Below, one piece after another: positions 1 through 59,914 of a stretch of 64,000 nucleotides of DNA. Below the pieces are notes generated by a model. The model searched no databases. It saw only the letters and a program-made list of their open reading frames with translations, and had not been told where the DNA came from. The stretch is from Macrostomum lignano (Eukaryota): NCBI GenBank assembly GCA_002269645.1, contig NIVC01003893.1:7152-71151 (forward strand), written 5' to 3'. Made by a program: the position numbers and the translations under genes. The number at the start of each line of letters is the position of its first letter. The stretch's first letter is position 1.

Positions 1-331
1 GTGGCCATCCGAATACTGCACTGGGACACAGTCGGTCTTTGAGCACATTCCAATCGGTGTGCAGCCAATCAGATGAAACGGCGGCATCGCTTCGATGCAC
101 GTGAGGTCAATGTCCGAGCCGACCTCGATTCGTCCGTCCAGCCTTGACAAGCAGTTGCCCCAACCGTCTGCGTAGCTGCCAACGACAAAGTAGCCGGCCT
201 GGTTCTTGCTTCTGATAATCTTTTGCAGTACCGCAGCGGCGCCGCTTTGCAGAACGGAGTTCTCCCGACTGAAGCCCGAGAGCAGAAGTGACTGATGCAG
301 CCGGAGGCTGTGTTGGACTGTGCTTTCCAAT
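1..331 (-). CDS. Exon 2 (partial, runs off window) of ankyrin-repeat / Mab-21 (cGAS-like, cGLR) nucleotidyltransferase
   Basis: Acceptor TTCTCCAG at 333-332, then a stop-free frame to base 1: LESTVQHSLRLHQSLLLSGFSRENSVLQSGAAAVLQKIIRSKNQAGYFVVGSYADGWGNCLSRLDGRIEVGSDIDLTCIEAM... It contains the GS and DxD motifs of Pol-beta-type/Mab-21 NTases. Phase matches the donor at 847 (CG+A = Arg). Confidence 0.75.
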
Positions 332-847
332 CTGGAGAATTGTTTGAAACTTGATTGCATAAATGTGTCTAAATTTGGCTTTGCTTCCTTTCTATTAAAC
401 AGGCCCTTCCTGTTCCGTGTAAATCGTATAAGTATTCGGAGGGCAGCAGACACCCTGGCGCAACGCCTACGGTGATATCGTCCTGCAACAAGTGGCGAGG
501 CAATTCTACCCAGTCCGCTGATTCCTGAGCACATACTGTACGCAGGCACGCACTCATACACACGCTCACACAGGGTGTACAGCAGCCCTTTGAGTTTCTG
601 ATTGTCAGGCATGTACACCCTGACTTTCACATGTCAGGGTGTGAATCGCAGGACAACTCCATTGGTCAATTTTCGTGCACACAAGCCGTAAATAAATGTG
701 GCCACACACGGGATCAAACCACGTGTCTGTGAGCGAGCGTCGGATCAAGGACAACTGTATATAGCTATATACAGTGGTCCTTGCGTCGGACGCGTTTACC
801 GACTGCTGTTCCCCTCTTTTCCTGGTTCTGAGATTTCGGTAACTCAC

Positions 848-2475
848 CGATGAACTGGCGGCAGGATGCTTCTTTTCATTGCTATAAATCTTTTGAACTC
901 TTCAACGAAAACTTCAGAACCAGTTAGGCCTGACAAGTCGTTTAGGTCGCTTGAGTGCAACAATTGCGACTCAGACAGGGAAGCGAGAACCTCAATCTGG
1001 CCCCTGTAGCACGCAAAAGCGAAGCACTTCAACTCGTCGAGGAGCATCCTGTTCCAATGTTGTCGCGTCCTACGGCGTGGATTTCTGCACGATCGAAGAT
1101 AGTTCAGAACTCGAATGCACCCGTTTTGAGCAGCAAGCCACAGTGGTGACATGCCCACAGGGTCCAGGACATCAACGTTAACTCCGGCATCCAGCAGATT
1201 GATTGCGGCTTCTTCCTGACGCATGTCGATAGCTAACACAAGCGAGCTGGTACCGGATGCGCTGACGCGGTTCAGATCCGATCCGGCTTCAATCAGGGCG
1301 CCAATCACGCCAATATTTCCGGACCGCACCGCTATGCCTAGTGGAGTCAGATGGCCTTCGCCGACTATGTTGAAATTCGCGCCGGCTTTGAGCAGCTGCA
1401 ACGCCACCGCCAAGTGACCCTCGCGCGAGGCGATCCACAATGGGCTGCAACCGAAGCAGTTGCAGTCGTCAGTTCGGGCTCCAGCCTTCAGAAGCAACTC
1501 GACTACGCGAGTGTGGCCACCCTCGGAGGCGAAATAGAGTGCCGAGCAGCCCTCGAACCCAGACTGATTCACATTCGCTCCAAACTTTAGCAGCTCACGA
1601 ACACACTCAGCGTGACCTTCGAGTGAAGCGGATGTCAGTGGACTGTTGCCAATCGTGCTGAGCACGTCCACTTTAGCTCTGTACTTCAGCAGCAGACGCG
1701 TGACCTTCAGATGTCCATTAGACACTGCAGCGTGTAATGGCGAACTGCCCATGTTATCGCAGCGATCAACAGTGGCACCAGCCCTGAGTAGACGCAACAC
1801 GGTGCTGACGTGTCCGTGATCTGCCGCCGTCCATAGAGGGGAAGCATCGGTGCAGTCTGCAAGTTCAATGTCCGCCCCAGCTCGAATGAGCTCGTCAACG
1901 ACCTTGACGTGACCATTCTGGGCGGCGATCCACAGTGATGTGCTGCCGTCATTCATTGGAAGATTCAGCAGAGCGACGCTGCACATTTCCGTTGAAAGCA
2001 GAAGCCGGACAAAGGACGCGTAACCGTTCTGGGCCGCAATATACAGAGGCGTGTAGCCATCTTCAGCTTGCTGGCTGATGTCAGCGCCAGCATTGATTAG
2101 CAGCGTCGCCACCTTCACGTGACCGTACTGCGCGGCAATGTGCATCGGCGACCAGCCCCTGTTCTCCGGTAGGTCGCAGTCCGCACCAGCGGCCAGCAAC
2201 GCGGCTACTGTTGCCGTTCGACGGTTCTGAACCGCCACGTAGAGCGGCGTGGCGCCGAACTCTTGGCGCGGATTCAGCAGAGCTCCGGCGGAGATCAGCC
2301 GCTTGACAACGCGGACGTGACCGCGCCAAGCGGCTGCGCACAGCGGCGTCCAGCCGTTGCGCTGTCGCTTGTTCAGTCGGGCACCAGTTCGAATCAGGCG
2401 GTCCACTTCTGATGGCGAGGTAAAATATGCTGCAGTCAATAAAAGCTTTTCACATTCAGTCTCTGCATTTTGCAT
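848..2475 (-). CDS. Ankyrin-repeat exon (about 13 full repeats) of the ankyrin-NTase gene
   Basis: Repeated GxTPLxxAAxxGHxxVVxxLLxxGA units. Likely start ATG at 2475 (MQNAETECEKLLLTAA). Ends at CG|GTGAGT donor (847), so the ORF-track stop at 844-846 is intronic. Confidence 0.9.
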
Positions 2476-2484
2476 CTTTTGCAC

Positions 2485-2646
2485 TAGAGGCTTTAGCACC
2501 AGGGGCTTTAGCACCAGGGGCTTTAGCACCAGGGGCTTTAGAACCAGGGGCTTTAGCACCAGGAGCTTTATCACCAGGGGCTTTAGCACCAGGGGCTTTA
2601 GCACCAGGGGCTTTAGCACCAGGGGCTTTAGCACCAGGGGCGCCAG
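2485..2646. repeat. 15-bp minisatellite (CTTTAGCACCAGGGG) x10
   Basis: Tandem units 2491-2640; the same unit occurs reverse-complemented at 63806-64000. Confidence 0.95.
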
Positions 2647-3269
2647 CAATGAACCTAACCAAAACTGCCCCACAAGCAAGTGTCTCCAGCAACAAGCCGA
2701 CTCACCCTGCAGGTCGCCTCTGTCAGCTGCCAGCCACAGAGCTGACCGGCCATCCGGCAGAACTTTTCGATCCGAGCTTCGATTTGTCTCATGCATAAAT
2801 AGCGTGTGGCATGAGCTCACTTTAGCATGCAAAATTACATGATTTGCAGTGCTTTTTACGAGCGTAAATTAAAAACACTGGCCCTAGCATATCATTACAA
2901 GTTAGAGAGCTAAAATTTTTCTTTCTTCAGAGCGTCAGCGTGTACACTTCAAATATGCACATTTAGAGCAGTGTACACGCCTAATGTTCAGCATGATTGC
3001 TTGCGTACTTTTCTTGTCAGTGAATAGTACGCAACTTCATGCCCTAACCACCCTACTTATTTTAGTAGAGTAGAGTGGTGAGTTGGTAAGTAAGTGTACT
3101 CTTAAGAATCTGTTATTTGCGCTATTAAACAGCTATAGAAATAAAAAAACAATTAGAAAACCTATAAGATGCGTGCCCACACGATTATAAGGTAAGGTAA
3201 TAAATAGAATATGAGATTTGACGCGATGAGATTAGACAGACTGTAGATTAGACAGAATAAAAATAGAAA

Positions 3270-4170
3270 AGATGAGATTAGACAAGATATGATCAGACAG
3301 GATGATTTCAGACAGGATGACACTAGACAGGATGGGAATAGTCAGGATGAGAATAGACAGAATGAGACTAGACAGAATGAGACTAGACAGAATGAGACTA
3401 GACAGAATGAGAATAGACAGGATGAGACTAGACAGAATGAGACTAGACAGAATGAGAATAGACAGAATGAGAATAGACAGAATGAGAATAGACAGAATGA
3501 GATTAGACAGAATGAGAATAGACAGAATGAGACTAGACAGAATGAGACTAGACAGAATGAGAATAGACAGAATGAAATTAGACAGGATGAGACTAGACAG
3601 AATGAGACTAGACAGAATGAAATTAGACAGAATGAGAATAGACAGAATGAGACTAGACAGAATGAGACTAGACAGAATGAGACTAGACAGAATGAGACTA
3701 GACAGAATGAAATTAGACAGGATGAGACTAGACAGAATGAAATTAGACAGGATGAGACTAGACAGAATGAAATTAGACAGGATGAGACTAGACAGAATGA
3801 AATTAGACAGGATGAGACTAGACAGAATGAGAATAGACAGAATGAGACTAGACAGAATGAGAATAGACAGAATGAAATTAGACAGAATGAGAATAGACAG
3901 AATGAGACTAGACAGAATGAAATTAGACAGGATGAGACTAGACAGAATGAGACTAGACAGAATGAGAATAGACAGAATGAGACTAGACAGAATGAGAATA
4001 GACAGAATGAGACTAGACAGAATGAGAATAGACAGAATGAGACTAGACAGAATGAGACTAGACAGAATGAGACTAGACAGAATGAGACTAGACAGAATGA
4101 GAATAGACAGGATGAGACTAGACAGAATGAGAATAGACAGGATGAGACTAGACAGAATGAGATTAGATGG
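3270..4170. repeat. 15-bp minisatellite (AATGAGACTAGACAG)n
   Basis: About 60 tandem units; the source of the RQNET/DRMRL pseudo-ORFs. Confidence 0.95.
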
Positions 4171-4577: not shown

Positions 4578-5062
<485 letters not shown>

Positions 5063-7032
5063 ATTCTACTCTATCTAGATATTCACAGAAAGGTGAAACA
5101 TCCGGTCGTTGAGATGCGCGGGGGCACTCCAAGGACAGCCAGTTGCGATCTCCAGCGCCTGGTAAAAAGCTGTAGGATTGGGATGTGTTTTTCTGGGGGT
5201 GGCGGACGCCAGGCCCCCGGTGGGATAAGTGATCACGTGAGCTGCATTTCCGTTGTCACGTGGTCCAGGCGAGCGGTTAGCGCAGGGAAGGGGAAGGGGG
5301 CGGGCCGGAGGAGGAGGAAGAGGAGGAGGAGGGGAGGAGGTGAGAATTGAGAAATCTGGTTTCTGGCCCGCATGGTGGGAGGGAGAGATTAAGAGAGGGA
5401 AGGAGGCCTGAAATTTGAAACGCCAGCCCCACCAACGCGATGCAAATATGTCCCGATGAGATCAGTGAGCTCGTACATGCACGAGTCGCTCCCCTGGCAG
5501 TCAGGGAGGATTTCAAAGGTCTATATTCAGCTTATAGGACTAGCTATAGCGCAGAAATGCTTACCATCTATGGATAATTCGCACTCGACATTTTGTTAGA
5601 GAGAGGAGGCGTTCTGCTCTGGTGCAGTGGATTGTTCGGCATCATTGAAGATTGTACGAGTACAGAGTCTCTTCAGCATTGATTTACTTTTGTCAGTGCA
5701 ATAGCAAAGAATCCCCATTCGCTGCAACAGCAGCCACTAGAGAGATGACGCACGGCTTTTGAGTGCAGCTACGACCCAGACACGAGTGCACAAAGCGCAT
5801 GATATTTTTATACTGAACAGCAATTTGTCAATGGAAAACTTCAGGAAAATTGTCATTATTTCAGCCTATTTGAATTCGCGCGGCCATTATTTCAGGCTAG
5901 CGGGAGGAGTCAGCCTAACTGAAGGAAAAGGGTTGATTTGACCATAGACTATAACAAATATTAACCGTTTAAGATTGTTATTGCTCTATCACTGTGCGTA
6001 AGATACAATGGAGGGTTGTCTGGAAGTGAGAATTCACGAGTGGCTATCGCCGCTCGTGTCTATGGCCATTACCATGTTTTCTCACTTCCAGCTAACTTAA
6101 TTGGTCAATTTGTCCACCAGGATCCGAGTGAGGAGGAATGGGGGTGTGGGGGCGAAGCCCCCACTTACAACAACAGACTATTTTATTTTACGCTCATAGA
6201 CTCGTTCTTTATTCTAAAATGATATCCCGGTAAATTGCTTTATTGTCAATTTCAAACAATGACCGGTCATTACTTGAATGTCATTGCCTTAACGTAAATT
6301 ACAATTGACAATTTAGAACTGATATCATTTTAGAAAGTGCTTTAACGTCTATGGTAAAAACCAAGTGGGTTGGTCACTTGTTGGCTATACCATTCGGCAA
6401 TACCATAGCACTGTCATCCCGCCAATCTATTGACTCCTGAGAACGCGTCGAGCTAAGTGGATTTTCGCCATAGACAAAATCGATCAAGAAAAGTCCAATT
6501 TCACTAGTTGAGCATACTGCATACAAAAATTAAGCTTAATCTGTCTTGGTTGTAAACAATTTTAGTCGAATAAAAATCCCAATTGAAAATTGTCAATCAC
6601 TATGATTGAAAGTGCAATAATTGATATCAGATTATTGTCAGACCATGTCAACTTCCCTTATATTACGTCCCTGTCATATACAGCAGCTTTACTAAGGGGC
6701 TTATTAAGACTCAAGCTCTTCCATATAAGGATACGTGGGCTGGTAAACCACCCGCAGTCCCTATAGTAGACTCTCGGTCGGGGATTAACTCCAGCAACTT
6801 GACACGAATGTTTTGATTATCGTTAGCAGCAGCTTCTACAGGCGTAGCATTCGCATGGGGTCCGCTTACGAACAGTTTGTTGACATTTACGGAGGTAGGA
6901 AACAGACGGGACTGTCTTTTTAGCTGGAGATAAAATGCAGCTGCTTGTGCGCTGCCAGCACTATGGAAATGCGAACTGCAGCCATGCAGAAACAGCACTA
7001 GCGCCCCTGCCTCCCACTGACTCCCACAGTGG

Positions 7033-7625
<593 letters not shown>

Positions 7626-7762
7626 GTCGAAGAAATAATAAGAGTAAACACACTACATTTAAATTAGATGTTCAATTGAATAAGATGAGGAGCCAGTAAG
7701 TGGGCACACGGCCCAAACCGATATATTTATATGACATTAACTTTAGGGGTGCAAGATAAGAC

Positions 7763-11444: not shown

Positions 11445-12013
11445 TCAAAGCTTAGACGAGCGCACCGAACTCGACGCAGCCACGTGCGGCGCCAGCTCCA
11501 GTTTGGCGACTGACCTTAGATGAACTTCGTCCGGTCCATCGGCCAGCCGCAGCACCCGAGACCAGGTGTACAGCACAGACAGAGGCAGGTCAAGCGACAG
11601 TCCGGCTCCGCCGTGAATTTGAATAGCCCTATCAATTATCTCCGTGGCAACTCGCGGGGTCATTACTTTAATTAGCGCAATCTCTTTCATGGCCTTTTTA
11701 TTGCCAACGGTGTCCATCAGGTGGGCAGTTTTCAGCACTAGAAGGCGGGCAGCCTCCAGCTGGGCCCGGCTCCAAGCGATGCTCTGCTGAACACTGCCTT
11801 GAGCAGCTAGCGGCTTGCCGAACGCTACCCGGGACACTGCTCTCTGGCAAGCCAGCTCGATTGCTCTCTCGCAATGGCCGATCAGCCGCATGCAGTGATG
11901 CACCCGGCCGGGACCAAGCCGGCCCTGGGCGATTTCGAATCCGCGACCTTCGCCTAGAAGAACATTCTCGGCTGGTACAATGACATTGTCGAAACGGACT
12001 TCCGCGTGGCCAG
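11445..12013 (-). CDS. ACAD10: ACAD10 exon 9 (ACAD C-terminal domain, ends SKL*)
   Basis: CCCATTGCAG acceptor; [10 protein letters not shown]...ADGPDEVH...SSKL*. Confidence 0.95.
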
Positions 12014-15000
12014 CTGCAATGGGCACAAGAAAATTGGGGTGGAGTGAAGTATAATTGGGGTGGAGTGAAGAATAATTGGGGTGGAGTGAAGGATAATTGG
12101 GGTGGAGTGAAGGATAATTGGGGTGGAGTGAAGGATAATTGGGGTGGAGTGAAGGATAATTGGGGTGGAGTGAAGGATAATTGGGGTGGAGTGACGGATA
12201 ATTGGGGTGGAGTGAAGGATAATTGGGGTGGAGTGAAGGATAATTGGGGTGGAGTGACGGATAATTGGGGTGAAGTGAAGGATAATTGGGGTGGAGTGAA
12301 GGATAATTGAAGTGGAGTGACGGGCGATTTGGGGTGGAGTGACGGGAGCATGTAATTGATGGATAGAATGCAGGTAGAAGGGCGGATAGAATACAAGTAG
12401 AAGGTCGGATAGAATACAGGTAGAAGGGCGGATAGAATACAGGTAGAAGGGCGGATAGAATACAAGTAGAAGGGTGGATAGAATACAAGTAGAAAGGCGG
12501 ATAGAATACAAGTAGAAGGGCGGATAGAATACAGGTAGAGGGCGGATAGAATACAAGTAGAGGGGCGGATAGAATACAGGTAGAGGGGCGAATAGGCTAC
12601 AGGTAGAGGGGCGGATAGAATACAGGTAGAGGGCGGATAGAATACAAGTAGAGGGGTGGATAGAATACAGGTAGAAGGGCGGATAAAATACAGGTAGAGG
12701 GCGGATAGAATACAGGTAGAAGGGCGGATAGAATGCAGGTAGAGGGTGGATAGAATGCAGGTAGAGGGTGGATAGAATGCAGGTAGAGGGTGGATAGAAT
12801 GCAGGTAGAAGGGCGGATAGAATGCAGGTAGATGGTGGATAGAATGCAGGTAGAGGGTGGATAGAATGCAGGTAGAGGGTGGATAGAATACAGGTAGAAG
12901 GGCGGATAAAATACAGGTAGAGGGCGGATAGAATACAGGTAGAAGGGCGGATAGAATGCAGGTAGAGGGTGGATAGAATGCAGGTAGAAGGGCGGATGGA
13001 ATGCAGGTAGATGGTGGATAGAATACATTACATTACTCATAGGACTAGGTGGAACTGTGCACAGCGGGTACGGCAGCACTCAACACAATTATATTCAGGC
13101 TGCGATAAAACATATAAAACCTAGCAGATTGAAGCCGGAAATACAAAGGTAGGGGTGCAGCCTACCGACGCCACCCTGAACCGCCCTACCGAGATAAGAC
13201 ACCGCGTGACCAGTTATTTGTACAAGCATTACTATTATTAATACACAAGTACTAACCAGTCTATAACACAGGTCAGTTAAGGGCTAAGCGGAAGTGGCAC
13301 GCTAGATAACAGAAATTTTATTTGAATAAAACATCTCCCCTCGTGTCCAGAATTATAGAACTCAAAAAGACTGAAAGACGGGGAGAGGGAGACTGTAAGA
13401 GTAGGAGGATTAAGAAAGCTGGTGCCCCCCGTTAGGCCCGACCTTGCGAGAGAGAAAGAGAGGAAGGAGAAAGACAAGAACGTCATTCCCAAATCCGAGG
13501 AGTAGTTTCTGACTGGTCTGGACAAGGTTCCCACCCCCAAGTCGATTCAAAGGCCGAAAAAGGATAGGATCATTTGCATCTCTTATGCAGGAGTTGGGGT
13601 TGACGCTGTTGTGCACTGCCAGGGGGCAAGAGAGGGAGAGAGAGAGAGTTAACGCTGCGTGTACACTCGCCGTAAACGTACAATAGGCCCGCTACGTCAG
13701 TGAAAGATTTTTATTGATCTATCTCTCTCCTTCTCTTTCTTACTGCACTTCCCTGCACTACTGACAAGCCAGCACTGCCCCGCCGACTGTTCAGATTAGA
13801 ACCTACACAACCCACCATTTGCTCTCTCCCCCTCTCTCTCTGCCCTCTCCCCTGTCTGCAGCTCGCTTTTCTATTCGCTTAGCGGCAGCGACAGCAGCAG
13901 TCTCTACTGTCGCACTCGTGGGCGCCTGCGTTCTTCTCTCCGTTTCCTTCTATCCTTTTTTTTCTCTCCTGTCGTCTCTTTTATCGGCTTGATGTACCAT
14001 TTGCCTCCTTCCCCCCTCCTCTCCTCTCCCCCCTCTCTCTACACTTTTCTGAAAGCGACGGCCGAACACTGACTATGTAGTATACCAAAGGGCGTGTGCA
14101 CATGGACGAGTTAATTTGCATATATATATACGCATCTTTTCCACCGATTCGTCTCACAATCTATCGGTAAAATACTTTCTATAGAAAATCTCTACACACA
14201 TAGAGATAGAACAGCCTTGAACCAATTAGTTCTAGACGCAAACTGCGTCCAGCTTCGGTTGCTAAGGGATACATCAGTCAGAACTAGTGCGGTGCAGAAT
14301 GTCGCAAACAGGCTGCTTAGTTCGATCTAAACGAGCTTCAACTAAGAGCAATAATTCCACGGCATCGACTGTCAGCAGCGGTACAGGCGCTGCCGGCGGC
14401 GCTGCCTGCCTGTTTGGCGCCTGTTTTGGCGCCGGCGCCGGGGCAGGTAGCGGCGCGGCAGGTCGAGCGAATCCAGTAAACGCCGACGCGATTGAGAAGC
14501 TAACAGAGAGACTGGCTTATCACATCCAGCTGGGCAATACTCGGTCGGTGGAGCGGATACTCCGCAAACTGCGAGCGGTGCCTCCATCCAAGGTGGTTGT
14601 CTCGGTCAAGAGGCGACACCTCAGCCCGAATTTCCTAGCCTGGACCAACAGAAGCCAGGATCCATTTCTACACTTTCACCAAGAGTGCTCGCCAGTGGTC
14701 TGGGCAGTGGACAATCAGCAGTGGCAGATGCTGCCAATTCTAGCCAAATACGGTCACGATCCTAACAGGCCTTTGCAGTGCAAACGGTGGAACTTCTCGC
14801 CGGCGTCCAGCAATCGCTCAGCGATGGTGCCCTACAAGAAGTTCTGGACAAAGGGCCGCTACACCTACCAGTCAGCTTTGGACTACTACTTCGGATCGAT
14901 CTACGAATTTCTGGGCGAGGAGATGCAAAGAATGAGCTCGTCGGCTGTAGGCTACTCGTCGCCGTCAACGTTTTATTATTTCTTTCAGCAGTTGCCCCAG

Positions 15001-18000
15001 CTGCTACTGAGAGGCATCGACGTGCACAGAATCGATTCTATCATATTGTTCAATTCGCTAGGCTATTCGCTAAACTGGTACCTCACCAAGTACACCAACG
15101 AGAACAACACGGTGCCGGACATTCCCGAACAGAACGACTCGTGCGCCGAGATCTTCACAGTCAGAAGTTTAATCAAAGCCGGCTTTTCCGAGTTCGAATG
15201 CCTCGAGTTTCTGTCCTCGTCGCACAACTGGTTCGGCATCCTGATCTGTCTGCTGTGCCACCCCAGACTTGACCAGTACGGGTCGAACATCCAGCTACCG
15301 CCAATCATCCAGGAGGCCGCCCTGCTACTTATCAACTTCTTATCGTTGAGCAGCTCGCATCCAACAAGCGAAGAGATCAGCGAGAGCCTGGAGAACCTCT
15401 CCCTCAGGAAGCTGTACGCTAAGCGCTACTCCCAGCGACGCCAAGAGTTCAAAGACAATCTGGAGACGTTGCAACGGGCCTGCTCGGATTTCAACAAGCG
15501 ACCAATGTCGCTGAGACTGCAGGCGCGCAACGCCGTTCGACGTAACATCGGCGGCGTGGATTTTGGAGCAAAGCTGCGCAGACTGGCGCAGACCTTCCCG
15601 GCGGAGGTGGTCGCCTTCCTATCCTACGTGGACATGGACTCTCTGCACCTGCTGCACCCGCCTCGGGTGCTGCTCAAACTGGCCAAACGAGAGAATCCAT
15701 TCTCAACCGAGGACGCTGCGGAAGCTTCGAGCAGCGATGGCGAGTCTGCCGGCTCCACCAGTCATGAAGGCGAGGTCAGCGTTGTTTAGAACTATGTAAT
15801 TTTCAGTACGGAATTCGTAACTCTTATACAAAAAGTTTGAGTCCTTGTGTCCAAGATTTCATTCTTCGCTTTCTGTGAACCGATGCTTTTTCCCTCCTAC
15901 TAGCTAAACAACAAATAGTAATCATAATTATAATATTTAACCGATATGATTTTTCTATTTGCTGCTGTCCAACTCTATAAACTAACTGTGTCTTCGTGTG
16001 TCTGTTTAGTCCTTGTGCACTCTTCAGCTTTCCTTCTGTTTACCTGTATGTATAGAAATTCTGTGCAGTTTTACACATCGTTACACAAGTAATTAACCTT
16101 CTTAAATATTATTATTGTAAATTTTATACCTGTTGCCAGTTAAATCTCTGCTAACCTTGCATGGTTACTAATAGATAGAAGTTCCAACACGGTTTTTAAC
16201 GATAATAATAGTCATAAAAACAGTAACCATGCAGTCAAAAGCCAAATTTGCTATTTAAAAAACTAACTGTGGCAATTAACTATTAGCTAAATAACTTGTG
16301 CAACTGCGAGCCCGATTGTTAAAACACTGTTAACTAATCAGTCCGTTTGTGTCATTCAAAAAATTCCAATCTTGTTTCAATTGATTACAATTTATAGCGA
16401 TAATGACTCACTAATAAAAAAGTTCTGTAATTTTTTTGATTCAGTTCAGAGTCCCCTGTCAAATCTTATATGGTCGCTTGGTGTAAATACGGCAACTAGG
16501 AAACATGTGCTTCATTTTTCAAAGCAAACTATGAGCATATATAGTAAGCAATGCATAGTATTTGTTCAAGTTGATGTATACCAGCCTAGATGCATTCATA
16601 TGTCTACAATATTTAAACGGAAACTGAAAAATCCGATTGACTTAACATCACCGCACTGGCTGTTTTACTTTTAGGCAATTTTTTTTACCTGAAAAATATA
16701 CTCAAGTCAAAACAGAGGATTCTATATTAAGCAATGATAAACTCCATTTCAATTCAGTGACTTGTAATAATATTAAAAATAATTGATTACATCTGGCCCG
16801 ATTGGACCAGATGTTCAACCGACAGCTCAGCCGCAGCTATTGCGCGGCGCATCTGAAGGCTGCGTACGGCTGTTCAGTCCAAGGACTGGTGGTTCGCCAC
16901 ACACACCCTCAATTACCCCAGCTAATGCTGGCACCCATTTTACAGCTAAGTGAACTGAAGCAGTGCAGAGTTGTGTCTTGCTCAAGGGCACAAATTGTTC
17001 CGAGTGGGATCGGGAATCGAACCCCCGACCTTTAAGTCGTGAGTCTGACGCTCTAACCTCTAGGCTACAACCTCCCATTGATTTGTCGAATGGACTCTTT
17101 GCTGAGAAGACAAGGTCGTTTAATTTGGCGCCATCTCAAGCATTGATTGTGGCGCTATCTCAAGCATTGATTGTGGCGCCATCTCAAGCATTGATTGTGG
17201 CGCCATCTCAAGCATTGATTGTGGCGCCATCTCAAGCATTGATTGTGGCGCCATCTCAAGCATTGATTGTGGCGCCATCTCAAGCATTGATTGTGGCGCC
17301 ATCTCAAGCATTGATTGTGGCGCCATCTCAAGCATTGATTGTGGCGCCATCTCAAGCATTGATTGTGGCGCCATCTCAAGCATTGATTGTGGCGCCATCT
17401 CAAGCATTGATTGTGGCGCCATCTCAAGCATTGTTTGTGGCGCCTTCTCAAGCACACAACTTACTTACTTACTTACTACTGACGGGGGGCGCAGGCGCCG
17501 CGAATAGGCCGCGAGGCCCCTATCGCAACCCCAAGGTAAAAGAGCACAAGGATTAGCCTTGGGGGTGCGCCCAGTCCCCGCCAGTAGTCGGCAGGTCCGC
17601 AGTGGAGGCATCGGCGACCCTCATCCGGCCGGAGTCCCGGACGAAGGCGCGGAGGTCTCGGATATTGTCCGCGGTGGTCAGCTCGTCCATCCGCTGGGGG
17701 TGGCCGAGGTATTTGTGCCGCGCCTTGTTGAAGTAAGGGCAGAAGGTGACGTGATGCTCCGCGGTCTCCTCTCCTATGCCACAGAAGGGACAGGTGGGAG
17801 GGCAACCGGTTTGCAACGATATATGTCTCTGGAAGAATCCGTGGCCGGTTAGGACCATGCACATCTCCCTGAGGTCGGTTCTGTTAAGCGAAATCAGATA
17901 ATCAGAGACTTTCCTGTTCAGGTTAGGCATGGCAGAGCGGCTCTGCCTGTACTCGGTGCAGCTGTTCCAGTGGAGCTGGTGCTGCTGATGGAGCCACCTG

Positions 18001-21000
18001 TTGATATGGCGGGTGACTTGCGACCTGGGGGTGGGTAGCCTCATCAGACGGTGGTTGCCGTCTGGGTTGCTGCCCTCCTTGGCGAGAGAGTCCGCGAGCT
18101 CGTTGCCCAGGATGTTGCTGTGACCAGGTGTCCAGATAATTCTAATCCTGTTAAGGACTGAGAGAGATTGCACACTGCGGTGGCATTGAGATACTGTAGC
18201 AGCGGAGATATTCTCAGTGGTTAAGGCCTTAATAGCAGCTTGGCTATCAGTGTAGAAATTAATGTCAAAATTATTAATGTTCGCCTGAAACAGTTGCTGG
18301 GCACACTGCTCAATGGCGCAAATTTCAGCTTGGAAAACTGAGGTGTTCTCACCGAGGTGCAGACTTTCCTGGAGAAGCATCTTACCCTCGTGGAAAATGG
18401 CAATACCCGCTCCAGCGCGGCCGTTGAACAGCGAGCCGTCGGTGAAGCAGTGAATGCCCTGGCTGCGCCGGTTCACACCGACATCCAGCGGAATGTTGTC
18501 TCGGCCAGGGATGGCGGTCTTGAAGCCCCTCCTGATGTTGAGGGCGGGAGGTCGACTATCCACATTGCCCAGGTCCATGTGGATGTTGTTAAGGTCGCGG
18601 CGGACAAAGTCCATATGCGGGATTAATGTTTTCATTGGCATAAAGCCAGAGGGCGCGTTATTCAACGTTTTATCTCTGATAAGCCGGGAGGCAGACTTCA
18701 TAGCCTCCGCCCTAATAAATAGGTGAAGCGGAGGCAGGTTAAGGATAGTGTTCAGCCCCTCGTAAGGGGTGGACGGGTACGCACCTGTGATGGCACGGCA
18801 AATGCTGCCCTGAAGCTGGTACAGCCGCTGACGGGCGGCCTTCTGCTCCAGCACGCTAGTCCAGATGAGACTCGCGTATGTGATACTGGGCCGGATGATG
18901 CCGGTATAAATCCAACGGACCGTTCTAGGCGAGAGGCCCCAAGTCGGCCCGATGGCTCTGCGCAGCTGGGCAAAGCAGCGTTTTGCCCGACCGATGACGT
19001 TATCAAGGTGCTTCGTCCAGCGCAGGTCATGCGTTAGCGTCACACCGAGGTATTTGACCTCCTTCTTGAAGGGGATGTTTCTGCCATAGACAGTGAGGTT
19101 TTTCATCTCCCATTTACGGCGCTTGGTGAAAACGACAGCGACAGTCTTAGTGACGCTGATTTTTAGGCCATGCTGTGTAGCCCAGTCGGCCGCCTTGTCG
19201 GCGAATTGCTGCATCAGGTTGCGCAGAGTGGCGGGGTCGGGTCCGCTGACGACCGCGGCAACGTCATCGGCGTAGCCCGCCCTGGTGATACTGCTGGGAA
19301 TGTCAGCGGTTAGAAGTTCGTCCATGACGAGATTCCAGAGAAGTGGAGTTAGCACGCCACCTTGCGGGCCGCCTTTCATCTCAAGCACACAAATCCAGTT
19401 TAATTATCATAAATCAGCCCGAAAACTTTCAAGAAGGATTTGAAAAAATGGCAATAATTTAGTCAGGTGCATCAGAACATCAAAATGTCCATTTTTAGAC
19501 ATCCTTGACTATCTACCATGTCTGTCAGTCTTACATTTTTTCGAGGGTAATTATTCTCCTCCCACTTTTTATTTTCTCAATTAACTATGCTTCAGCTTTT
19601 ACTGCTGAAGTTTTCTACCTTGATTTATAGTAAAGCCAAGAGGCGAAGTAGCTGAAAAGCCTAATTTAGGCTAAAAAATCATCATAAAGTATATTTATAG
19701 CAATGATCTGGGTGCGCAATTACGAGTAGTGTAGCTGAGTTGAATTTTCAGTTCCAATAGTTCCATCAGCTTAAAACTCCATCACCTCAAACTCCATCAT
19801 CTCAAACTCTATCACCTCAAAACTCCATCAGCTCAAAACTCCATCTGCTCAAGATTCCATCATCTCAAAACTACATCAGCTCAAAACTACATCAGCTCAA
19901 AACTACAATCTGCTCAAGATTCCATCACCTCAAAACTACAGCAGCTCAAAAGTACAGCAGCTCAAAACTACAATCTGCTCAAGATTCCATCACCTCAAAA
20001 CTACAGCAGCTCAAAAGTACAGCAGCTCAAAACTACATCAGCTCAAAACTACATTAGCTTAAGATTCTAATTAGCTCAAAACTACATCTGCTCAAAACTA
20101 CATCTGCTCAAAACTACATCAGCTTAAGATTCTAATTAGCTCAAAACTACATCTGCTCAAAACTACATCAGCTTAAGATTCCATTAGCTCAAAACTACAT
20201 CAGCTTAAGATGAATGTAAAGCTCAAAACTTTATCATTTCAGAATTCCATCATCTCAAAACTTCACCAACTCAAAACTCGATCAACTGAGAAGTATGAAA
20301 ACTTGTTTCTAATACGAATGAGCAAAGTAAAAAGTTCAGCCTACAGAACAGAATACAATACGCAGAAGACAACTGCCTTCTCTCTCTAGTCAACCAACTA
20401 TATTGAAAAACTTGTTACATTTCCCGCAAAAATTGTTGTAACTTGTACTTTTAGAAAGTCCCTGTAACAAAATATATATGCACAAAAGTTCGTCCAATAT
20501 TTGTCTGTACTTTTAACTTTTCTAGCCGGCTAATTATGAGCAAACTCACATTACACTCACATGATGACTAATTAGCTTGCGGGGGAGGCAGAAAGGGAAT
20601 GGAGGCGGGTCGGGGTGGTTGTGTAATTACCACTTTATGATGTCTAATTGTTTCAAGCACAGAGCAAGGTCAAAAACAAATATGAGCGTATTATGGTAAA
20701 AAAACCTTAAACTTACAACGAAACCCAATAAAATTCTGCAATTTAATCAATTGAAGAAAAAATGACTAAAATATTATTGCATATTTAACTTCATTGTTTA
20801 CCACAGGGTTTGATCGGTTATTAGAAATTGTTTATTCACTATAGATTTCGAGAGAGAGAGTCAAATAGTGTCAGTCAAAGTAGTGTCAGTCAAAGTAGTG
20901 TCAGTCAAAGTAGTATCAGTCAAATAGTGTCAGTCAAAAAGTGTCAGTCAAATAGTGTCAGTCAAAAAGTGTCAGTCAAAGTAGTGTCAGTCAAAAAGTG

Positions 21001-24000
21001 TCAGTCAAAAAGTGTCAGTCAAAGTAGTGTCAGTCAAAAAGTGTCAGTCAAATAGTGTCAGTCAAAAAGTGTCAGTCAAATAGTGTCAGTCAAAAAGTGT
21101 CAGTCAAAGTAGTGTCAGTCAAAGCAATGTCAGTCAAAGTAGTGTCAGTCAAAAAGTGTCAGTCAAAAAGTGTCAGTCAAATAGTGTCAGTCAAAGTAGA
21201 GTCAGTCAAAAAGTGTCAGTCAAATAGTGTCAGTCAAAAAGTGTCAGTCAAAAAGTGTCAGTCAAAAAGTGTCAGTCAAAGTAGTTTCAGTCAAAGTAGT
21301 GTCAGTCAAAAAGTGTCAGTCAAAAAGTGTCAGTCAAAGTAGTGTCAGTCAAAAAGTGTCAGTCAAAGTAGTGTTAGTCAAAGTAATGTCAGTCAAAGTA
21401 GTGTCAGTCAAAAAGTGTCAGTCAAATAGTGTCAGTCAAATAGTGTCAGTCAAAATGTTTCAGTCAAAAAGTGTCAGTCAAATAGTGTCAGTCAAATAGT
21501 GTCAGTCAAAATGTGTCAGTCAAACGTGGGCCCCGAGCTCACACTGCCATGGTATCAACGTGTACAGCTGTGAGCTACTGTAGAGAGCTGACAGCTAGCA
21601 AACTGAACATTAATAAAAATTACTTTAAACTGAACTCACCTGGAGCGTCAACAAAGCCGAACACGTGCAGAGGACGAACCACGGTGACCCCGGGTGAGTC
21701 CATCGGCACAAGCAGCATCGTCTGCTGTTTGTGAGCGGCTGCTGAAGTATCAGTTTTGCCCATAAATATGGCCACTTTGCAATTGGGATGCAGGGCTCCG
21801 GAGATCCACCATTTGTGGCCGTTCACTACGTAGTGAGAGCCGTCTGGCGAGCGGCAGATCGAAGCTTCGATGTTGGTGGCGTCCGAAGAGGCGACGGCCG
21901 GTTCCGTCATTGCGAAGCAGGAGCGAATGCTGCCTGCTAGGAGGGGATCGAGCCAGCGGCGCTTCTGCTCCTCTGTGCCGTAGCGGACCAGCACCTGGTT
22001 GGGGTGTTGGATTGGGGATTTCGGGTAACTGGGGTGTTGGATTGGGGATTTCGGGTAACTGGGGTGTTGGATTGGGGATTTCGGGTAACTGGGGTGTTGG
22101 ATTGGGGATTTCGGGTAACTGGGGTGTTGGATTGGGGATTTCGGGTAACTGGGGTGTTGGATTGGGGATTTCGGGTAAACTGACAGGGTGTTGGATTGGG
22201 AATTTCGGGTAAACTGACAGGGTGTTGGATTGGGGATTTCGGGTAACTGGGGTGTTGGATTGGGGATTTCGGGTAAACTGACAGGGTGTTGGATTGGGGA
22301 TTTCGGGTAAACTGACAGGGTGTTGGATTGGGGATTTCGGGTAAACTGACAGGGTGTTGGATTGGGGATTTCGGGTAACTGACAGGGTGTTGGATTGGGG
22401 ATTTCGGGTAAACTGACAGGGTGTTGGATTGGGGATTTCGGGTAACTGGGGTGTTGGATTGGGGATTTCGGGTAAACTGACAGGGTGTTGGATTGGGGAT
22501 TTCGGGTAAACTGACAGGGTGTTGGATTGGGGATTTCGGGTAACTGACAGGGTGTTGGATTGGGGATTTCGGGTAAACTGACAGGGTGTTGGATTGGGGA
22601 TTTCGGGTAAACTGACAGGGTGTTGGATTGGGGATTTCGGGTAAACTGACAGGGTGTTGGATTGGGGATTTCGGGTAAACTGACAGGGTGTTGGATTGGG
22701 GATTTCGGGTAACTGGGGTGTTGGATTGGGGATTTCGGGTAACTGACAGGGTGTTGGATTGGGGATTTCGGGTAAACTGACAGGGTGTTGGATTGGGGAT
22801 TTCGGGTAAACTGACAGGGTGTTGGATTGGGGATTTCGGGTAAACTGACAGGGTGTTGGATTGGGGATTTCGGGTAACTGGGGTGTTGGATTGGGGATTT
22901 CGGGTAAACTGACAGGGTGTTGGATTGGGGATTTCGGGTAAACTGATGGGATGTTAGATTGGGGATTTCGGGTAAACTGACAGGGTGTTGGATTGGGGAT
23001 TTCGGGTAACTGGGATGTTAGATTGGGGATTTCGGGTAAACTGATGGGATGTTAGATTGGGGATTTCGGGTAAACTGATGGGATGTTAGATTGGGGATTT
23101 CGGGTAAACTGGGATGTTAGATTGGGGATTTCGGGTAACTGGGATGTTAGATTGGGGATTTCGGGTAAACTGACAGGGTGTTGGATTGGGGATTTCGGGT
23201 AAACTGACAGGGTGTTGGATTGGGGATTTCGGGTAAACTGACAGGGTGTTGGATTGGGGATTTCGGGTAAACTGACAGGGTGTTGGATTGGGGATTTCGG
23301 GTAAACTGACAGGGTGTTGGATTGGGGATTTCGGGTAACTGGGGTGTTGGATTGGGGATTTCGGGTAACTGACAGGGTGTTGGATTGGGGATTTCGGGTA
23401 AACTGACAGGGTGTTGGATTGGGGATTTCGGGTAAACTGACAGGGTGTTGGATTGGGGATTTCGGGTAAACTGACAGGGTGTTGGATTGGGGATTTCGGG
23501 TAAACTGACAGGGTGTTGGATTGGGGATTTCGGGTAACTGGGGTGTTGGATTGGGGATTTCGGGTAAACTGACAGGGTGTTGGATTGGGGATTTCGGGTA
23601 AACTGATGGGATGTTAGATTGGGGATTTCGGGTAAACTGGGATGTTAGATTGGGGATTTCGGGTAACTGGGATGTTAGATTGGGGATTTCGGGTAACTGG
23701 GATGTTAGATTGGGGATTTCGGGTAAACTGATAGGGTGTTATATTGGGGATTTCGGGTAAACTGATAGATGTTAGATAGGGGATTTCGGGTAACTGGGAT
23801 GTTAGATTGGGGATTTCGGGTAAACTGATAGGGTGTTATATTGGGGATTTCGGGTAAACTGATAGATGTTAGATAGGGGATTTCGGGTAACTGGGATGTT
23901 AGCTCGTAAGATTGGGGATTTTGGGTAACTGGATGGGTGTTAGATTGTGAATACATACTGCAGCAGGTGTTACAGAAGCGACAAACCTCCATATTCCCAG

Positions 24001-49295: not shown

Positions 49296-49987
49296 ATGTC
49301 GCATCTAGTTTCATTTCCTCGCCTACTACTTACTAGCACTTGTAGTAGTAGTAGTATACCACGATTAAGTAAGCTACCATTAAATTATTGCCGTCGCAAT
49401 TTATTTGGTCGTAAAAAGGTGCGCGTTGATCAGCACACGCCAATTCTATTTGGCGAAGTCAACGAACGCGGCGGCTATGCTGCGCCCTTTAAAGAGAGTC
49501 TGTCAATGCGCGATTGGTTGAGAATCTATAAGCGAGCTTGGCTAGAGCTGCCAGAGTCCTATGCTGAACTTCGCAATTATCACTTGTACGATCGAGTCTC
49601 ATTCAAGTCTGTAGACGTTCGCCATGGCGATTATTATTATATTGGCTATTTGTCGCGCGACGGCGGCCACCACAAATGGATTGTCACGGCCGACTCTCAC
49701 TATGGCGAAGGCTATTCTACTGGGGAATTTATCCCGTCTAGTTGGCTGACTGATGTCAAAAATAAAGCTGGAGACTGTGGCATCGATCAGGATCAACCAA
49801 TTGTCAGGTGTACCGGACTGTTTCGCGGCGTCCTTGACACCCGTGTGCCGCAGATTGGCCAGCTAGTCAGAGCCGGTTACGTCAACTTGCGCTCGCCCTA
49901 CGCTCTCATGATTAAAGGTCGAGCTAGGGGTATCAATCTGCAGCCTTTGAATTGCATTGTGATCCGGTATCGAGGCGATGGGCGGAG
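49296..49987 (+). CDS. NDUFAF1: Complex I assembly factor CIA30/NDUFAF1, exon 1
   Basis: Presequence-like N-terminus; KWIVTADSHYGEGYSTG, RAGYVNLRS, RYRGDGR. Ends at an AG|GCGAGT donor. Confidence 0.88.
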
Positions 49988-50339
49988 GCGAGTACTTGCA
50001 TTGTTCTTCTTGTTTTGAATCGATAAATCGCTGATCTTCAAGGAACCGGTATCTAACTTAGAAAAAACAGGGTGCATTGGATTTCATGGCAAAATTTCTG
50101 CTTCTAAGAATCTAAGTCCTCTTTGCAACAGAGTGGCAAATTTTTATAAACTGCATTGAACTGCTGCTCCTACTAAAAAGAGGTACATTAATATTGTTCA
50201 CAATAGTAGCCGGGCATTGATCCGTCTGTTTGTACTGCGGTTTGTTTTGTATAAACTACCAATGTGCAGCTTACAGGCCTACTGTCTGTCTTACATTTAA
50301 TAATTATTCTGATAAGCTTGTTACCAGCGAATGCTTAAA

Positions 50340-52919: not shown

Positions 52920-53537
52920 ATGCCAGCCGATCTTGTACAAGAGCAAAGTCTTCATCATCCTCACAATCAGCAGCAGCGCTACTCGGCCAGCGACAGTACC
53001 ACGCCTAACAATGAGTTTGTCTACTATCCAATTGGCTCAATAATCGATCTAGTAACATCTTGCGATCGTCGAATACCCCGAGCGGAAGTGCTGTTTCACG
53101 ACCCGCTCTATAACATTGTGATAGTGAAATATCCAGCTTCTAGTGGCCGGGCAGGCCTACACGATATCACCTTTGTCCGACTGAATCACGCTAAACGCGT
53201 TGAATTGATATCTTATCCGGAACAATTCTCTGCTAATTCCAGTGCTACTGTTAGTAGTAGTAATGCTACAATTGAACAGCAATCATCTGGATCGAATAGT
53301 TCGCGCAAAACTAATGCCACATTTGCTGCTGTGGCCGCCGCTTCCGCGTCAGTTTCTGCAACAGCGAATTCTACAGTCGATGTCAATCACCATGACGATT
53401 CGAACGAGATTTTCAATGCTGCCTCCTCCGCAGCCGATATTGATCTTGACAAAGTTCGCGCCAGACTGAACCGCAGCCTACAACTAATTGATCGCGGAAG
53501 CGCTTTAATTGAAACTGAATCTAATTCGAACGAATAG
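52920..53537 (+). CDS. LSM12: LSM12-like protein (N-terminal Sm domain)
   Basis: YYPIGSIIDLVTSCDRRIPRAEVLFHDPLYNIVIVKYPASSG...HDITFVRLNHAKRVELI parallels LSM12 YFSVGSQV...GEVVAFD...KCPSSSG...DILLINL. No C-terminal AD domain is evident. Confidence 0.7.
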   Translation: MPADLVQEQSLHHPHNQQQRYSASDSTTPNNEFVYYPIGSIIDLVTSCDRRIPRAEVLFHDPLYNIVIVKYPASSGRAGLHDITFVRLNHAKRVELISYPEQFSANSSATVSSSNATIEQQSSGSNSSRKTNATFAAVAAASASVSATANSTVDVNHHDDSNEIFNAASSAADIDLDKVRARLNRSLQLIDRGSALIETESNSNE

Positions 53538-57020: not shown

Positions 57021-57947
57021 GATCCGGAAAATACTGCCCTATGGTCTTCATCTGTCTGTGATACAAAACTTATTTGAGTGTTTTTGGAGTCTAGTCTCTA
57101 CTCCAGATTTTATTTATAAGACTCCCTCGGCCAGGTGAAAGGTATATACAGGGAGAGAGACTTATAAGGCTCAACCAGATGCAGCAGCACATCTTCGGGG
57201 TTAAAAAATGGTAAAGACATTCTTTTCTCTCTCTCTCTCCTAGCTTTTTCTTAGATGCCCTGCGCGGTCCGAGTTTGCCCCGCGTCACCCCTCCTGGCCG
57301 ACCACCTCATTTTTGAGCGGCAATAAATTCCTTTGCCCAGCTGCTGCCTGCGGCTGCTTCTACTGTAGACCCAATTCCTCTGCTCTGTGACCAAAAAGTA
57401 TTCTATAGATCATATCGCATACAAGCTGCAGAGAAGATGAACGGACAGCCCAGTAGGCAATTGCCAGATCCGGAAGAACTGCTAGGCCGCAGGTTTGTTG
57501 AAAGCAGGTGAGTTTGCTATGAGTTACATGTAGATAATTTACAGGATTAAGATATGACACGTAACAATGTGGTAGCCACTTGTTTAATGGTATAATCTTC
57601 GGTTCATTGTAGTCACAGAAAACGACTTTCTAGTCAAATTCCAATCTACATGTACAGGAAGCTGGTGGGGGCTGACACATTTCACCGATACAACCTGATG
57701 TATTGTAATGCCCCTACTCAATCACTGTCATAAAAATACATGTAACACCATGAAAATTTTGCTACTTCAAAAGCTAAACCTAAATGCAATGGGCAACCAA
57801 ACTCGGGGGTGAACAGGTAAACAGGATAAGCAGGATTTGAGCTTTTTTGCCACCTCTGACGTGCCATCTACCGGCCTACAGTATGAGACAGAATGGCGCC
57901 CACCAATTTACAGGGCGCCCGCCATGAGACAGGGGCGCCTATTGTTG

Positions 57948-58870
57948 TGTTGCAGTTTCTGATCTTGTCCGAGATCTCCTCCCGAACTCGCTTCTGGTAG
58001 ACTTCCGATGCGGAAAAAATTCCATAGGGCATTCTCAGCCAACGATATCGTCCAAAAGGTGTGTGAAAGCACGTCATCAACGAACTTTCATAATCCAATG
58101 CAATCTGGTGAAAACTCGCAGTCGCATCAAAAGTTGAGAACAGAGCAGCGTTTCCGATTTCTGCAATAATTTCGTCATAAGACGGTATCTGATACTGCTC
58201 TCTCATTATGTTGGCATTCAGATGCTGAGGGTCTAGGCAAAGACGTATAGTCTTGTCTGCCTTCCAGACGACGACCACATTTGAAACGTACTTCGTGGGC
58301 TCATCACACTTGGTGATGAGTCCATCCGAAACCAGGCGATCTAATTCAGCCTTCAAAGGTTGCATTGCTGCAAACGGGATTCTTCGAGGGCGATCCGTCC
58401 AAGATTCTTTGTCATCGCGCAGGCTGATGTGATAACTCCCAGGTAAGCAACCTGTTCCTTCAAAGACATCGGGATACTCTCGAAGAAATCTTTCATCTGT
58501 CCACGTGGACTTAAACCCTTCAGGTTGAACAGAAACTCCGAAGTTGAATTTCACCAGGCCTATCTCTTCTGCAGTTTTCCATCCGATGAGTGGAATGAGC
58601 CTCTCTTTAATCACAATAAATTCATTTTTATGCTTGACTCCTTCATATTCCAGTTTCAATTGTACCTTCCCTGCGACTGTTAGGCGCGACCTTTTATAGC
58701 AAAAGAGTCTGCAAGACGTTGCTTGTATCGACGTGTTTGGTGCAATCCGCCTAAGCAGATGTTCAGGGAGTACATTTGCGTCCGCTCCTGTGTCGCATTT
58801 GCAATTCACCAGCTGACCTTCGATTTTGATACCAACAGTTGTTCTACTGTCTTTGTCGTTGCCACCCGGT
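57948..58870 (-). CDS. Gypsy pol N-part: aspartic protease + RT N-half
   Basis: CKCDTGADANVL (protease), IRLCLDPQHLN, FSTFDATASFHQI, FHTPFGRYRWLRMPYGI. Breaks at ...KIRNCN just before the FIDD motif. Confidence 0.88.
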
Positions 58871-59773: not shown

Positions 59774-59840
59774 TTGAATCCAGATCCAGTTGAGCACAGT
59801 ACTGCGTTTGACAATTCAAATCCAGAGCTCTTCACAAGTG

Positions 59841-59854
59841 CACCTCTGACACCA
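59841..59854 (-). promoter_or_regulatory. Primer-binding site of the Gypsy element
   Basis: TGGTGTCAGAGGTG, about 70 nt upstream of the gag ATG; the TGG start is typical of a tRNA-3'-end-complementary PBS. Confidence 0.7.
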
Positions 59855-59914
59855 TGTTGGCATTCAGATGCTGAGGGTCTAGGCAAAGACGTATAGTCTT
59901 GTCTTTCATCTGTT

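What the first reader, a model, noticed from the sequence alone, without database searches (positions are those of the whole stretch)
1..2475. Hidden ankyrin-repeat + cGAS-like (Mab-21/cGLR) nucleotidyltransferase fusion: a candidate innate-immune receptor
Seen: the ankyrin ORF's stop is the TGA inside a consensus GTGAGT donor at 847. A TTCTCCAG acceptor at 332 joins in the correct phase (CG+A) to a stop-free 110-codon frame that the ORF track missed. This frame has a predicted long helix, then FVVGSYADGWGN (GS at 180-175) and GSDIDL (D112-114, D106-108). Established: hG[GS]x(n)[DE]x[DE] is the catalytic signature of Pol-beta-type NTases, and GSxxEG/DG...SDxD is typical of invertebrate Mab-21/cGLR proteins, some of which make cyclic dinucleotides for STING. 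Inference: about 13 ankyrin repeats may act as a sensor or regulatory module on a second-messenger synthase. ANK/TPR-Mab-21 fusions may already appear in genome surveys, but I know of no characterised one in this lineage.
Basis: partly seen in the sequence, partly recalled or inferred. Interest (0 to 1): 0.9.

Follow-up and report, generated by a model that had tools for sequence, protein, structure and literature searches.

The report
Flatworm ankyrin-repeat cGAS-like enzyme gene

Summary
The ankyrin ORF's TGA (846-844) lies inside a GTGAGT donor. The CAG acceptor at 334-332 joins in phase to a stop-free frame carrying GS (180-175) and DxD (114-106). A public protein (P0001, 1218 aa) from Macrostomum lignano assembly GCA_002269645.1 matches the window exons 100% and contains exactly the ...PPVHR|LESTVQ... 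junction. One all-GT-AG, five-exon model reproduces it.

The part beyond base 1 supplies the third catalytic Asp and a Pfam Mab-21_C hit. An AlphaFold model (pLDDT 83) matches only cGAS, cGLR and MAB21 structures, with oyster Cv-cGLR1 the best match.

It is not new as a kind. Li et al. 2023 report ANK- and TPR-fused cGLRs. Their tables list M. lignano ANK-bearing cGLRs, and they cloned five paralogues of this family. None of the five is labelled active.

Corrections:
- The gene starts upstream, at ATG 2796.
- There are 14 repeats.
- A conserved C-terminal helical domain of about 270 aa has no known fold match.

Enzyme activity, ligand, product and receptor are all untested; I could not check whether M. 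lignano has STING.

The parts
2706..2796 (-). Coding exon 1 (Met 2796-2794 to G2706, phase 1). It encodes MHETNRSSDRKVLPDGRSALWLAADRGDLQ, the start of ANK repeat 1. The transcript-derived ORF of P0001 extends 5' to 2850 without a Met.
   Evidence: tblastn of P0001/P0078 at 100% identity; exon model
2409..2705 (-). Intron 1, 297 nt (CAGG|GTGAGT ... CCATCAG|AA). It is stop-free in the coding frame.
848..2408 (-). Coding exon 2 (1561 nt): ANK repeats 1b-14, a degenerate cap (LLDELKCFAFACYRGQIEVL) and a linker ending ...KRSILPPVH-R(CG).
1057..2751 (-). Ankyrin-repeat array of 14 units at about 33-aa spacing (P0078 residues 16-481), interrupted by intron 1.
   Evidence: Pfam Ank_2 E=1e-107 and Ank E=2.6e-79 with 12-13 stretches; register
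332..847 (-). Intron 2, 516 nt (TCATCG|GTGAGTTA ... AATTCTCCAG|ATTGGA). It holds the ORF's TGA (846-844) and two further in-frame stops.
1..331 (-). Coding exon 3, window part (the exon is 350 nt and runs 18 nt past base 1). It encodes the N-terminal spine helices, beta1, the GS loop, the DxD strand and a His/Cys-rich variable loop of the cGAS-like NTase core.
175..180 (-). G602-S603 of FVVGSYADGWGN (the G[S/G] activation-loop motif).
   Evidence: Invariant S52 and near-invariant G51 in alignment A1; present in almost all 90 family copies
106..114 (-). D624-I-D626 of GSDIDL (the first two catalytic acids). The third, D685 in PAVDHV, lies in exon 4, outside the window.
   Evidence: Invariant D73/D75 and near-invariant D134 in A1; family survey

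Best explanation
Window 1-2850 (minus strand) holds exons 1-3 of a five-exon Macrostomum lignano gene. It encodes a protein of about 1200 aa with four parts:
- 14 N-terminal ankyrin repeats;
- a short helical linker;
- a cGAS-like (Mab-21/cGLR) nucleotidyltransferase with an intact G-S ... D-x-D ... D active site;
- a helical C-terminal domain of about 270 aa that is conserved in the family and has no known fold match.

It belongs to a large, apparently lineage-specific paralogue family in this flatworm, and most members carry the same ANK-NTase architecture.

Shown: the gene structure, the domain architecture, the fold assignment, conservation of the catalytic residues, and the family expansion.

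Inferred: the protein is a ligand-activated synthase of a nucleotide second messenger, that is, a cGLR-type sensor. The ANK array would act as the ligand- or partner-binding or autoinhibitory module rather than the NTase groove binding nucleic acid directly. Product, ligand and downstream receptor are unknown.
For: Gene model:
- P0001, P0077 and P0078 are 100% identical to the window exons and carry the predicted junction.
- A unique GT-AG model on GCA_002269645.1 contig NIVC01003893.1 reproduces P0001.
- The GenBank annotation of this assembly is built only from RNA-seq/transcriptome assemblies (PMC5730564).

Homology:
- The 110-aa window fragment finds 74 proteins at E<=1e-3 (24 at <=1e-10) among 1.84 billion.
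- All named hits are M. lignano 'Mab-21-like HhH/H2TH-like domain-containing' or ANK proteins.
- Pfam Mab-21_C scores 28.1 bits against a cutoff of 24.1 in P0001.
- The family profile hits only cGAS/cGLR chains in the PDB; the best is Sp-cGLR1 (8gjy) at E=0.006.

Structure:
- The AF2 model has pLDDT 83.2 and pTM 0.84.
- The Foldseek top 50 are all cGAS/cGLR/MAB21L1/MB21D2; the best is Cv-cGLR1 (8gjw) at E=1.4e-7 with target TM 0.53.

Active site:
- The motif is GS-x20-DIDL-x56-VDH, which fits the spacing rules of Li et al..
- It is conserved in nearly all of 90 family copies, most of which have N-terminal ANK.

Literature (PMC9980059):
- ANK-fused cGLRs exist.
- M. lignano PAA accessions with Ank_2 are listed in its Table S2.
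- Five paralogues were cloned as cGLRs.

The core pI is 6.5, which is not the basic surface typical of nucleic-acid-sensing cGLRs.
Against: - There is no biochemical evidence for activity.
- The five M. lignano paralogue cores in the Li et al. screen have an empty 'Note' column, so none is among the 15 named active enzymes.
- The Pfam NTase-core model PF03281 does not hit any member tested, and the 110-aa fragment alone hits nothing in Pfam or PDB sequences.
- The residue before GS is Val, not the strict [QT].
- Foldseek TM scores are moderate (0.5-0.57).
- cGAS and STING are reported lost in flatworms, though that rests on Schistosoma (PMC4117786). Whether M. lignano has STING could not be tested here.
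- RNA-seq support for the junction is inferred from how the annotation was built. No reads were inspected.
Confidence: 0.72

Rival explanations
1. It is a catalytically silent Mab-21-fold scaffold. Like MAB21L1/2 or MID49/51, the domain would bind a nucleotide or partner without making a second messenger. The ANK array and C-terminal helical domain would then make it an adaptor protein.
For: MAB21L1 and MB21D2 are among the top structural matches. No activity is noted for the five cloned paralogue cores. The core pI is neutral. STING is reported absent from other flatworms.
Against: GS, DxD and the third Asp are kept in almost every one of about 90 diverged copies (25-45% identity), which indicates selection on catalysis. 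Under the Li et al. criteria, such sequences count as cGLRs with complete active sites.
Confidence: 0.2
2. There are two separate genes. An ankyrin protein would end at the TGA at 846, and an independent NTase gene would start at the in-frame ATG at 360-358 (MQSSFKQFSRLEST...).
For: An in-frame ATG exists 30 nt upstream of the acceptor, and the frame is open from about 633. M. lignano uses trans-splicing to cut polycistronic precursors. Some family members are NTase-only.
Against: Transcript-derived models from two assemblies/annotations join the exons. The majority of paralogues have ANK and NTase in one protein.
Confidence: 0.05
3. It is a different Pol-beta-type NTase (OAS, poly(A)/terminal uridylyl transferase) fused to ANK.
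For: There are sub-threshold Pfam hits to MTPAP-like palm and NTP_transf_2 at the GS region of two paralogues.
Against: No OAS/PAP/TUTase structure appears in the Foldseek top 50. The Mab-21_C hit is above cutoff, and the profile hits only cGAS/cGLR in the PDB.
Confidence: 0.03

Closest known systems
Macrostomum lignano cGLRs catalogued and cloned by Li et al. 2023 (PAA86972.1, PAA45980.1, PAA57558.1, PAA93208.1, PAA68676.1; PMC9980059, Tables S2/S3)
   Same: They come from the same species and the same paralogue family, with the same GS[FY].[DE][GA]W ... SD.D ... P..D ... GLK.YH.K ... CM.HFF motifs. Several carry N-terminal Ank_2 domains. PAA45980.1 clusters with P0074, and PAA57558.1 carries the P0042 sequence.
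   Different: They are different paralogues, roughly 30-45% identical to this module. Only truncated NTase cores were expressed, and none is labelled active. I could not establish whether this exact protein is in their Table S1, because the file is cut and the accession is masked.
Cv-cGLR1 (Crassostrea virginica, PDB 8GJW) and Sp-cGLR1 (Stylophora pistillata, PDB 8GJY)
   Same: These are the best structural match (E=1.4e-7) and the best PDB sequence-profile match (E=0.006). They share the bilobed cGAS-like cage and the catalytic triad.
   Different: Identity is 14-16%. Those are stand-alone enzymes activated by dsDNA or dsRNA, with basic surfaces. This one has an ANK array, an extra C-terminal domain and a neutral core (pI 6.5).
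Human/mouse cGAS
   Same: It shares the fold, the GS loop, the acidic triad and the LxSYHxK / HFFxxD helix-bundle motifs.
   Different: There is no zinc thumb at the cGAS position and no disordered basic N-terminus. Identity is 11-13%.
ANK- and death-domain-fused cGLRs of Stylophora pistillata (Li et al. 2023, Fig. 4C)
   Same: They share the architecture class: ankyrin repeats fused to a cGLR core, proposed to act as ligand- or protein-interaction modules.
   Different: They come from a different phylum and a different cGLR clade, and they too are uncharacterised.
MAB21L1 (PDB 5EOG/5EOM) and MB21D2 (7LT1)
   Same: The fold matches at comparable Foldseek scores.
   Different: MAB21L1/2/3 are described as lacking a predicted functional active site. 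They have a developmental role and no ANK.

Membership tests
cGAS-like receptor (cGLR), as defined by Li et al. 2023 | Active-site motif h[QT]GS-X8-20-[DE]h[DE]h-X50-90-h[DE]h (relaxed form: G[S/G] loop plus [ED]h[ED]-X50-90-[ED]) | tested here: met
   The sequence is VVGS-x20-DIDL-x56-VDH. The spacings fit and the relaxed form is fully met. The strict form differs at one position (Val instead of Q/T before GS).
cGAS-like receptor (cGLR), as defined by Li et al. 2023 | Sequence homology across both the NTase core and the C-terminal helix bundle | tested here: inconclusive
   The helix bundle is met: Pfam Mab-21_C scores 28.1 bits (cutoff 24.1), and the profile hits cGLR/cGAS in the PDB at E=0.006-0.4. 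The NTase core gets no PF03281 hit, only sub-threshold Pol-beta NTase hits in paralogues.
cGAS-like receptor (cGLR), as defined by Li et al. 2023 | Predicted structural homology to known cGLR/CD-NTase enzymes (AlphaFold) | tested here: met
   The model has pLDDT 83 and pTM 0.84. The Foldseek top 50 are all cGAS/cGLR/MAB21, with 8gjw best at E=1.4e-7.
cGAS-like receptor (cGLR), as defined by Li et al. 2023 | Ligand-dependent synthesis of a nucleotide second messenger | not testable with these tools
   This needs recombinant protein and NTP assays. Five paralogue cores in the published screen are not labelled active.
cGLR-STING pathway | A STING (TMEM173) receptor encoded in the same genome | not tested
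   No tool here searches the M. lignano genome or proteome by profile. The species is absent from Li et al. Table S5. The literature reports loss in Schistosoma only.
Pfam Mab-21 (PF03281) NTase domain | HMM match above the gathering threshold | tested here: not met
   There is no PF03281 hit at E<=1 in P0001 or seven paralogues, and none in the 110-aa fragment.
Ankyrin-repeat proteins | Tandem 33-aa ANK units matching the Pfam Ank models | tested here: met
   Ank_2 E=1e-107 and Ank E=2.6e-79; 14 units in register.

The most novel reading that the evidence does not exclude
The M. lignano ANK-cGLRs would be a lineage-specific, massively expanded receptor family. The ankyrin array would be the sensor, for a protein or other non-nucleic-acid ligand, rather than the NTase groove. 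The conserved C-terminal helical domain, which has no known fold match, would be an output or oligomerisation module. The signal would be read by something other than canonical STING, in a phylum thought to have lost the pathway.
Probability: 0.15. Interest if true: 0.75.

Novelty: new member of a known kind. Interest (0 to 1): 0.33.

Why it matters
No ANK-fused cGLR has a known ligand or product, and it is unclear what flatworms use downstream of cGLRs. M. lignano is a tractable lab model: the genome paper read here reports transgenesis, and RNAi works in it (my own knowledge, not checked here). A family of dozens of ANK-cGLRs in this species is therefore a reasonable place to ask how appended repeat domains control cGLR activation. 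This single gene adds little beyond what the public annotation and the 2023 cGLR survey already contain.

Tried and rejected
- Pfam on the 110-aa window fragment alone gave only a chance WelO5 hit at E=0.11.
- phmmer of the fragment against PDB sequences gave nothing meaningful.
- A word-indexed homologue search with the 189-aa spliced linker plus fragment gave no hits. The later word-indexed searches returned only 8 and 10 hits, so they say little about spread outside M. lignano.
- The alternative acceptor at 484-483 (TTGTTGCAG) is out of phase with the 847 donor.
- A separate-gene start at ATG 360 is rejected by the gene models and the paralogue architectures.
- A second cGLR or ANK copy elsewhere in the window: none found.
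- The C-terminal 278-aa domain was modelled alone (pLDDT 74). Foldseek against the PDB gave no match below E=0.3, only generic TPR-like helical repeats.
- The origin of the one non-Macrostomum hit (P0090, ENA ERZ24986310) could not be identified.
- Literature searches for STING or cGAS in Macrostomum found nothing relevant.
- I judged a STING homologue search with the word-indexed tool too insensitive and did not run it.

Full report
**What is in the sequence.** On the minus strand, a 662-codon ORF (844..2832) is almost entirely ankyrin repeats. Its stop, TGA 846-844, sits inside GGTGAGT, with the GT at 847-846. A TTCTCCAG acceptor (AG at 333-332) precedes a frame that stays open to base 1.
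- Both exons share one frame, so the 516-nt intron is necessarily a multiple of three.
- The downstream frame is actually open for 211 codons. The chance of that is about 1e-4.
- An in-frame ATG at 360-358 left open the reading 'two genes'.

**The splice is real.**
- A full HMMER scan of 1.84 billion representative proteins with the 110-aa fragment returned 74 hits. The top hit was P0001 (1218 aa), covering the query at residues 570-679.
- P0001, P0077 and P0078 are 100% identical to the window exons and read ...KRSILPPVHR|LESTVQHS... across the predicted junction. A later search marks P0001 as a protein the window itself encodes.
- Its gene lies on two contigs of GCA_002269645.1, the Macrostomum lignano Mlig_3_7 assembly. 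One is NIVC01003893.1 (71 kb, the window's source). The other is NIVC01005038.1, which is 99.5% identical over 12 kb.
- A search over GT/AG sites found one model that reproduces P0001 exactly. In window coordinates the exons are 2850..2706, 2408..848 and 331..-18, followed by -1074..-2479 and -2811..-3005. The introns are 297, 516, 1055 and 331 nt, all G|GTRAG...CAG.
- The GenBank annotation of this assembly was built solely from RNA-seq and transcriptome assemblies (StringTie, TACO, TransDecoder; PMC5730564). The junction is therefore transcript-derived, although I did not see the reads.
Met 2475 and the 15-bp tandem repeat at 2476-2641 are inside intron 1, and the CDS begins at ATG 2796.

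**What the protein is.**
- The N-terminal part has 14 ANK units. Pfam gives Ank_2 E=1e-107, and the 33-aa register gives the count.
- The C-terminal 649 aa form a module conserved end-to-end in the paralogues.
- Within P0001, Pfam finds Mab-21_C (PF20266) above threshold at residues 780-879. It does not find the NTase-core model PF03281.
- An alignment of the module with 14 paralogues shows the following invariant or near-invariant features: G51-S52, G56-W57, S72-D73-x-D75, D134 (PAVD), CH.V.A.PP, GLK.YH.K and CM.HFF..DA. The last two correspond to the cGAS helix-bundle motifs.
- The spacing GS-x20-DIDL-x56-VDH satisfies the cGLR active-site rule of Li et al., apart from Val in place of Q/T before GS.
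- The family profile hits only cGAS/cGLR chains in the PDB. The best is Sp-cGLR1 (8gjy) at E=0.006.
- An AlphaFold2 model has pLDDT 83.2 and pTM 0.84. Its 50 best Foldseek matches are all cGAS, cGLR, MAB21L1 or MB21D2. Cv-cGLR1 (8gjw) leads at E=1.4e-7 with target TM 0.53, and no OAS, PAP or TUTase appears.
- The last roughly 270 aa are helical and conserved, with invariant FHPF, D.AW.F.F, FLP and NF. Modelled alone, they match nothing in the PDB.

**The family.**
- Across 90 module copies, GS, SD.D and the third Asp are almost universal, and most copies sit behind an N-terminal ANK array.
- Every named member is from M. lignano. UniProt calls them 'Mab-21-like HhH/H2TH-like domain-containing protein' or 'ANK_REP_REGION domain-containing protein'.
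- One unnamed ENA protein is the only possible outsider.

**What is already known.** Li et al. 2023 (PMC9980059) catalogued about 3,000 cGLRs.
- They state that some are fused to TPR or ankyrin modules.
- Their Table S2 lists M. lignano PAA accessions with Ank_2 domains.
- Their Table S3 lists five M. lignano proteins (#89-93) cloned for the biochemical screen. These plainly belong to this family. PAA45980.1 falls in the P0074 cluster.
- The 'Note' column, which names active enzymes, is empty for all five.
- No paper in the library characterises an ANK-cGLR.

**Mechanism.**
- Shown: the architecture, the fold and selection on the catalytic residues.
- Inferred: a ligand-gated nucleotide second-messenger synthase. 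The neutral core (pI 6.5) and the lack of reported activity for isolated cores hint at two possibilities. Activation may not be by generic dsRNA or dsDNA, and the ANK array or the C-terminal domain may control it. This is weak evidence.
- The main rival is a catalytically silent Mab-21 scaffold.
- Product, ligand and receptor are unknown, and the presence of STING in this species was not testable here.

**Verdict.** The finding is a correct and careful read of raw sequence. It describes a gene that is already annotated, from a family already catalogued as (ANK-)cGLRs. It is a new member of a known kind and of moderate-to-low interest on its own.

Noticed in passing
window 2476-2641: A 15-bp tandem repeat (11 copies, CTTTAGCACCAGGGG) sits inside intron 1 of the ANK-cGLR gene. 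The 297-nt intron is stop-free in the coding frame, so retaining it would insert 99 in-frame residues.
   Followed up: partly
window 1-75 (module residues 86-110): Invariant His86 and Gly109-His110 flank a variable, often Cys-rich loop right after the DxD strand (here HLIGCTPIGMCSKTDCVPVQYSDGH). The number of Cys varies between paralogues. It may be a metal site, at a different position from the cGAS zinc thumb. Model confidence there is low (pLDDT about 60).
   Followed up: partly
L003 9925-11856 (beyond window base 1): A family-specific helical C-terminal domain of about 270 aa, with invariant FHPF, D.AW.F.F, FLP and NF motifs, has no significant PDB fold match.
   Followed up: yes
L002 vs L003: The whole locus is present twice in the assembly at 99.5% identity over 12 kb, and there are 98-99% protein variants (P0075, P0076) on other contigs. 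This is consistent with the known redundancy and duplication of the M. lignano genome.
   Followed up: partly
window 11448-36500, minus strand: Dispersed exons of an acyl-CoA dehydrogenase gene. Pfam confirms the ACAD C-terminal domain at 11448-12000 and the middle domain at 21623-21994. Upstream exons at about 30.4-31 kb and 31.8-36.5 kb look by eye like kinase/APH-like and HAD-like parts, which would be an ACAD10/11-type architecture. The introns are full of microsatellites.
   Followed up: partly
window 14287-15789, plus strand: A 500-aa ORF in a GC-rich island with no Pfam match lies inside an intron of the ACAD gene on the opposite strand.
   Followed up: partly
window 17553-19388 (minus strand) and 57868-62185: Retroelement remains are present. 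One is a LINE-like RT/RNase H ORF. The other is a Ty3/gypsy-like element whose gag/protease/RT part is on the minus strand and whose RNase H/integrase part is on the plus strand, so it is rearranged or broken.
   Followed up: partly
window 49296-50018 and 52920-53537, plus strand: These ORFs carry a CIA30 (complex I assembly factor) domain and an LSM12-like LSM domain. They are ordinary housekeeping neighbours.
   Followed up: partly
window 3226-4167, 4579-5061, 6935-7699 and many others: Very long mini- and microsatellites, for example a 15-bp unit in 63 copies and (ATAG)n in 121 copies, generate most of the long spurious ORFs in the window.
   Followed up: no
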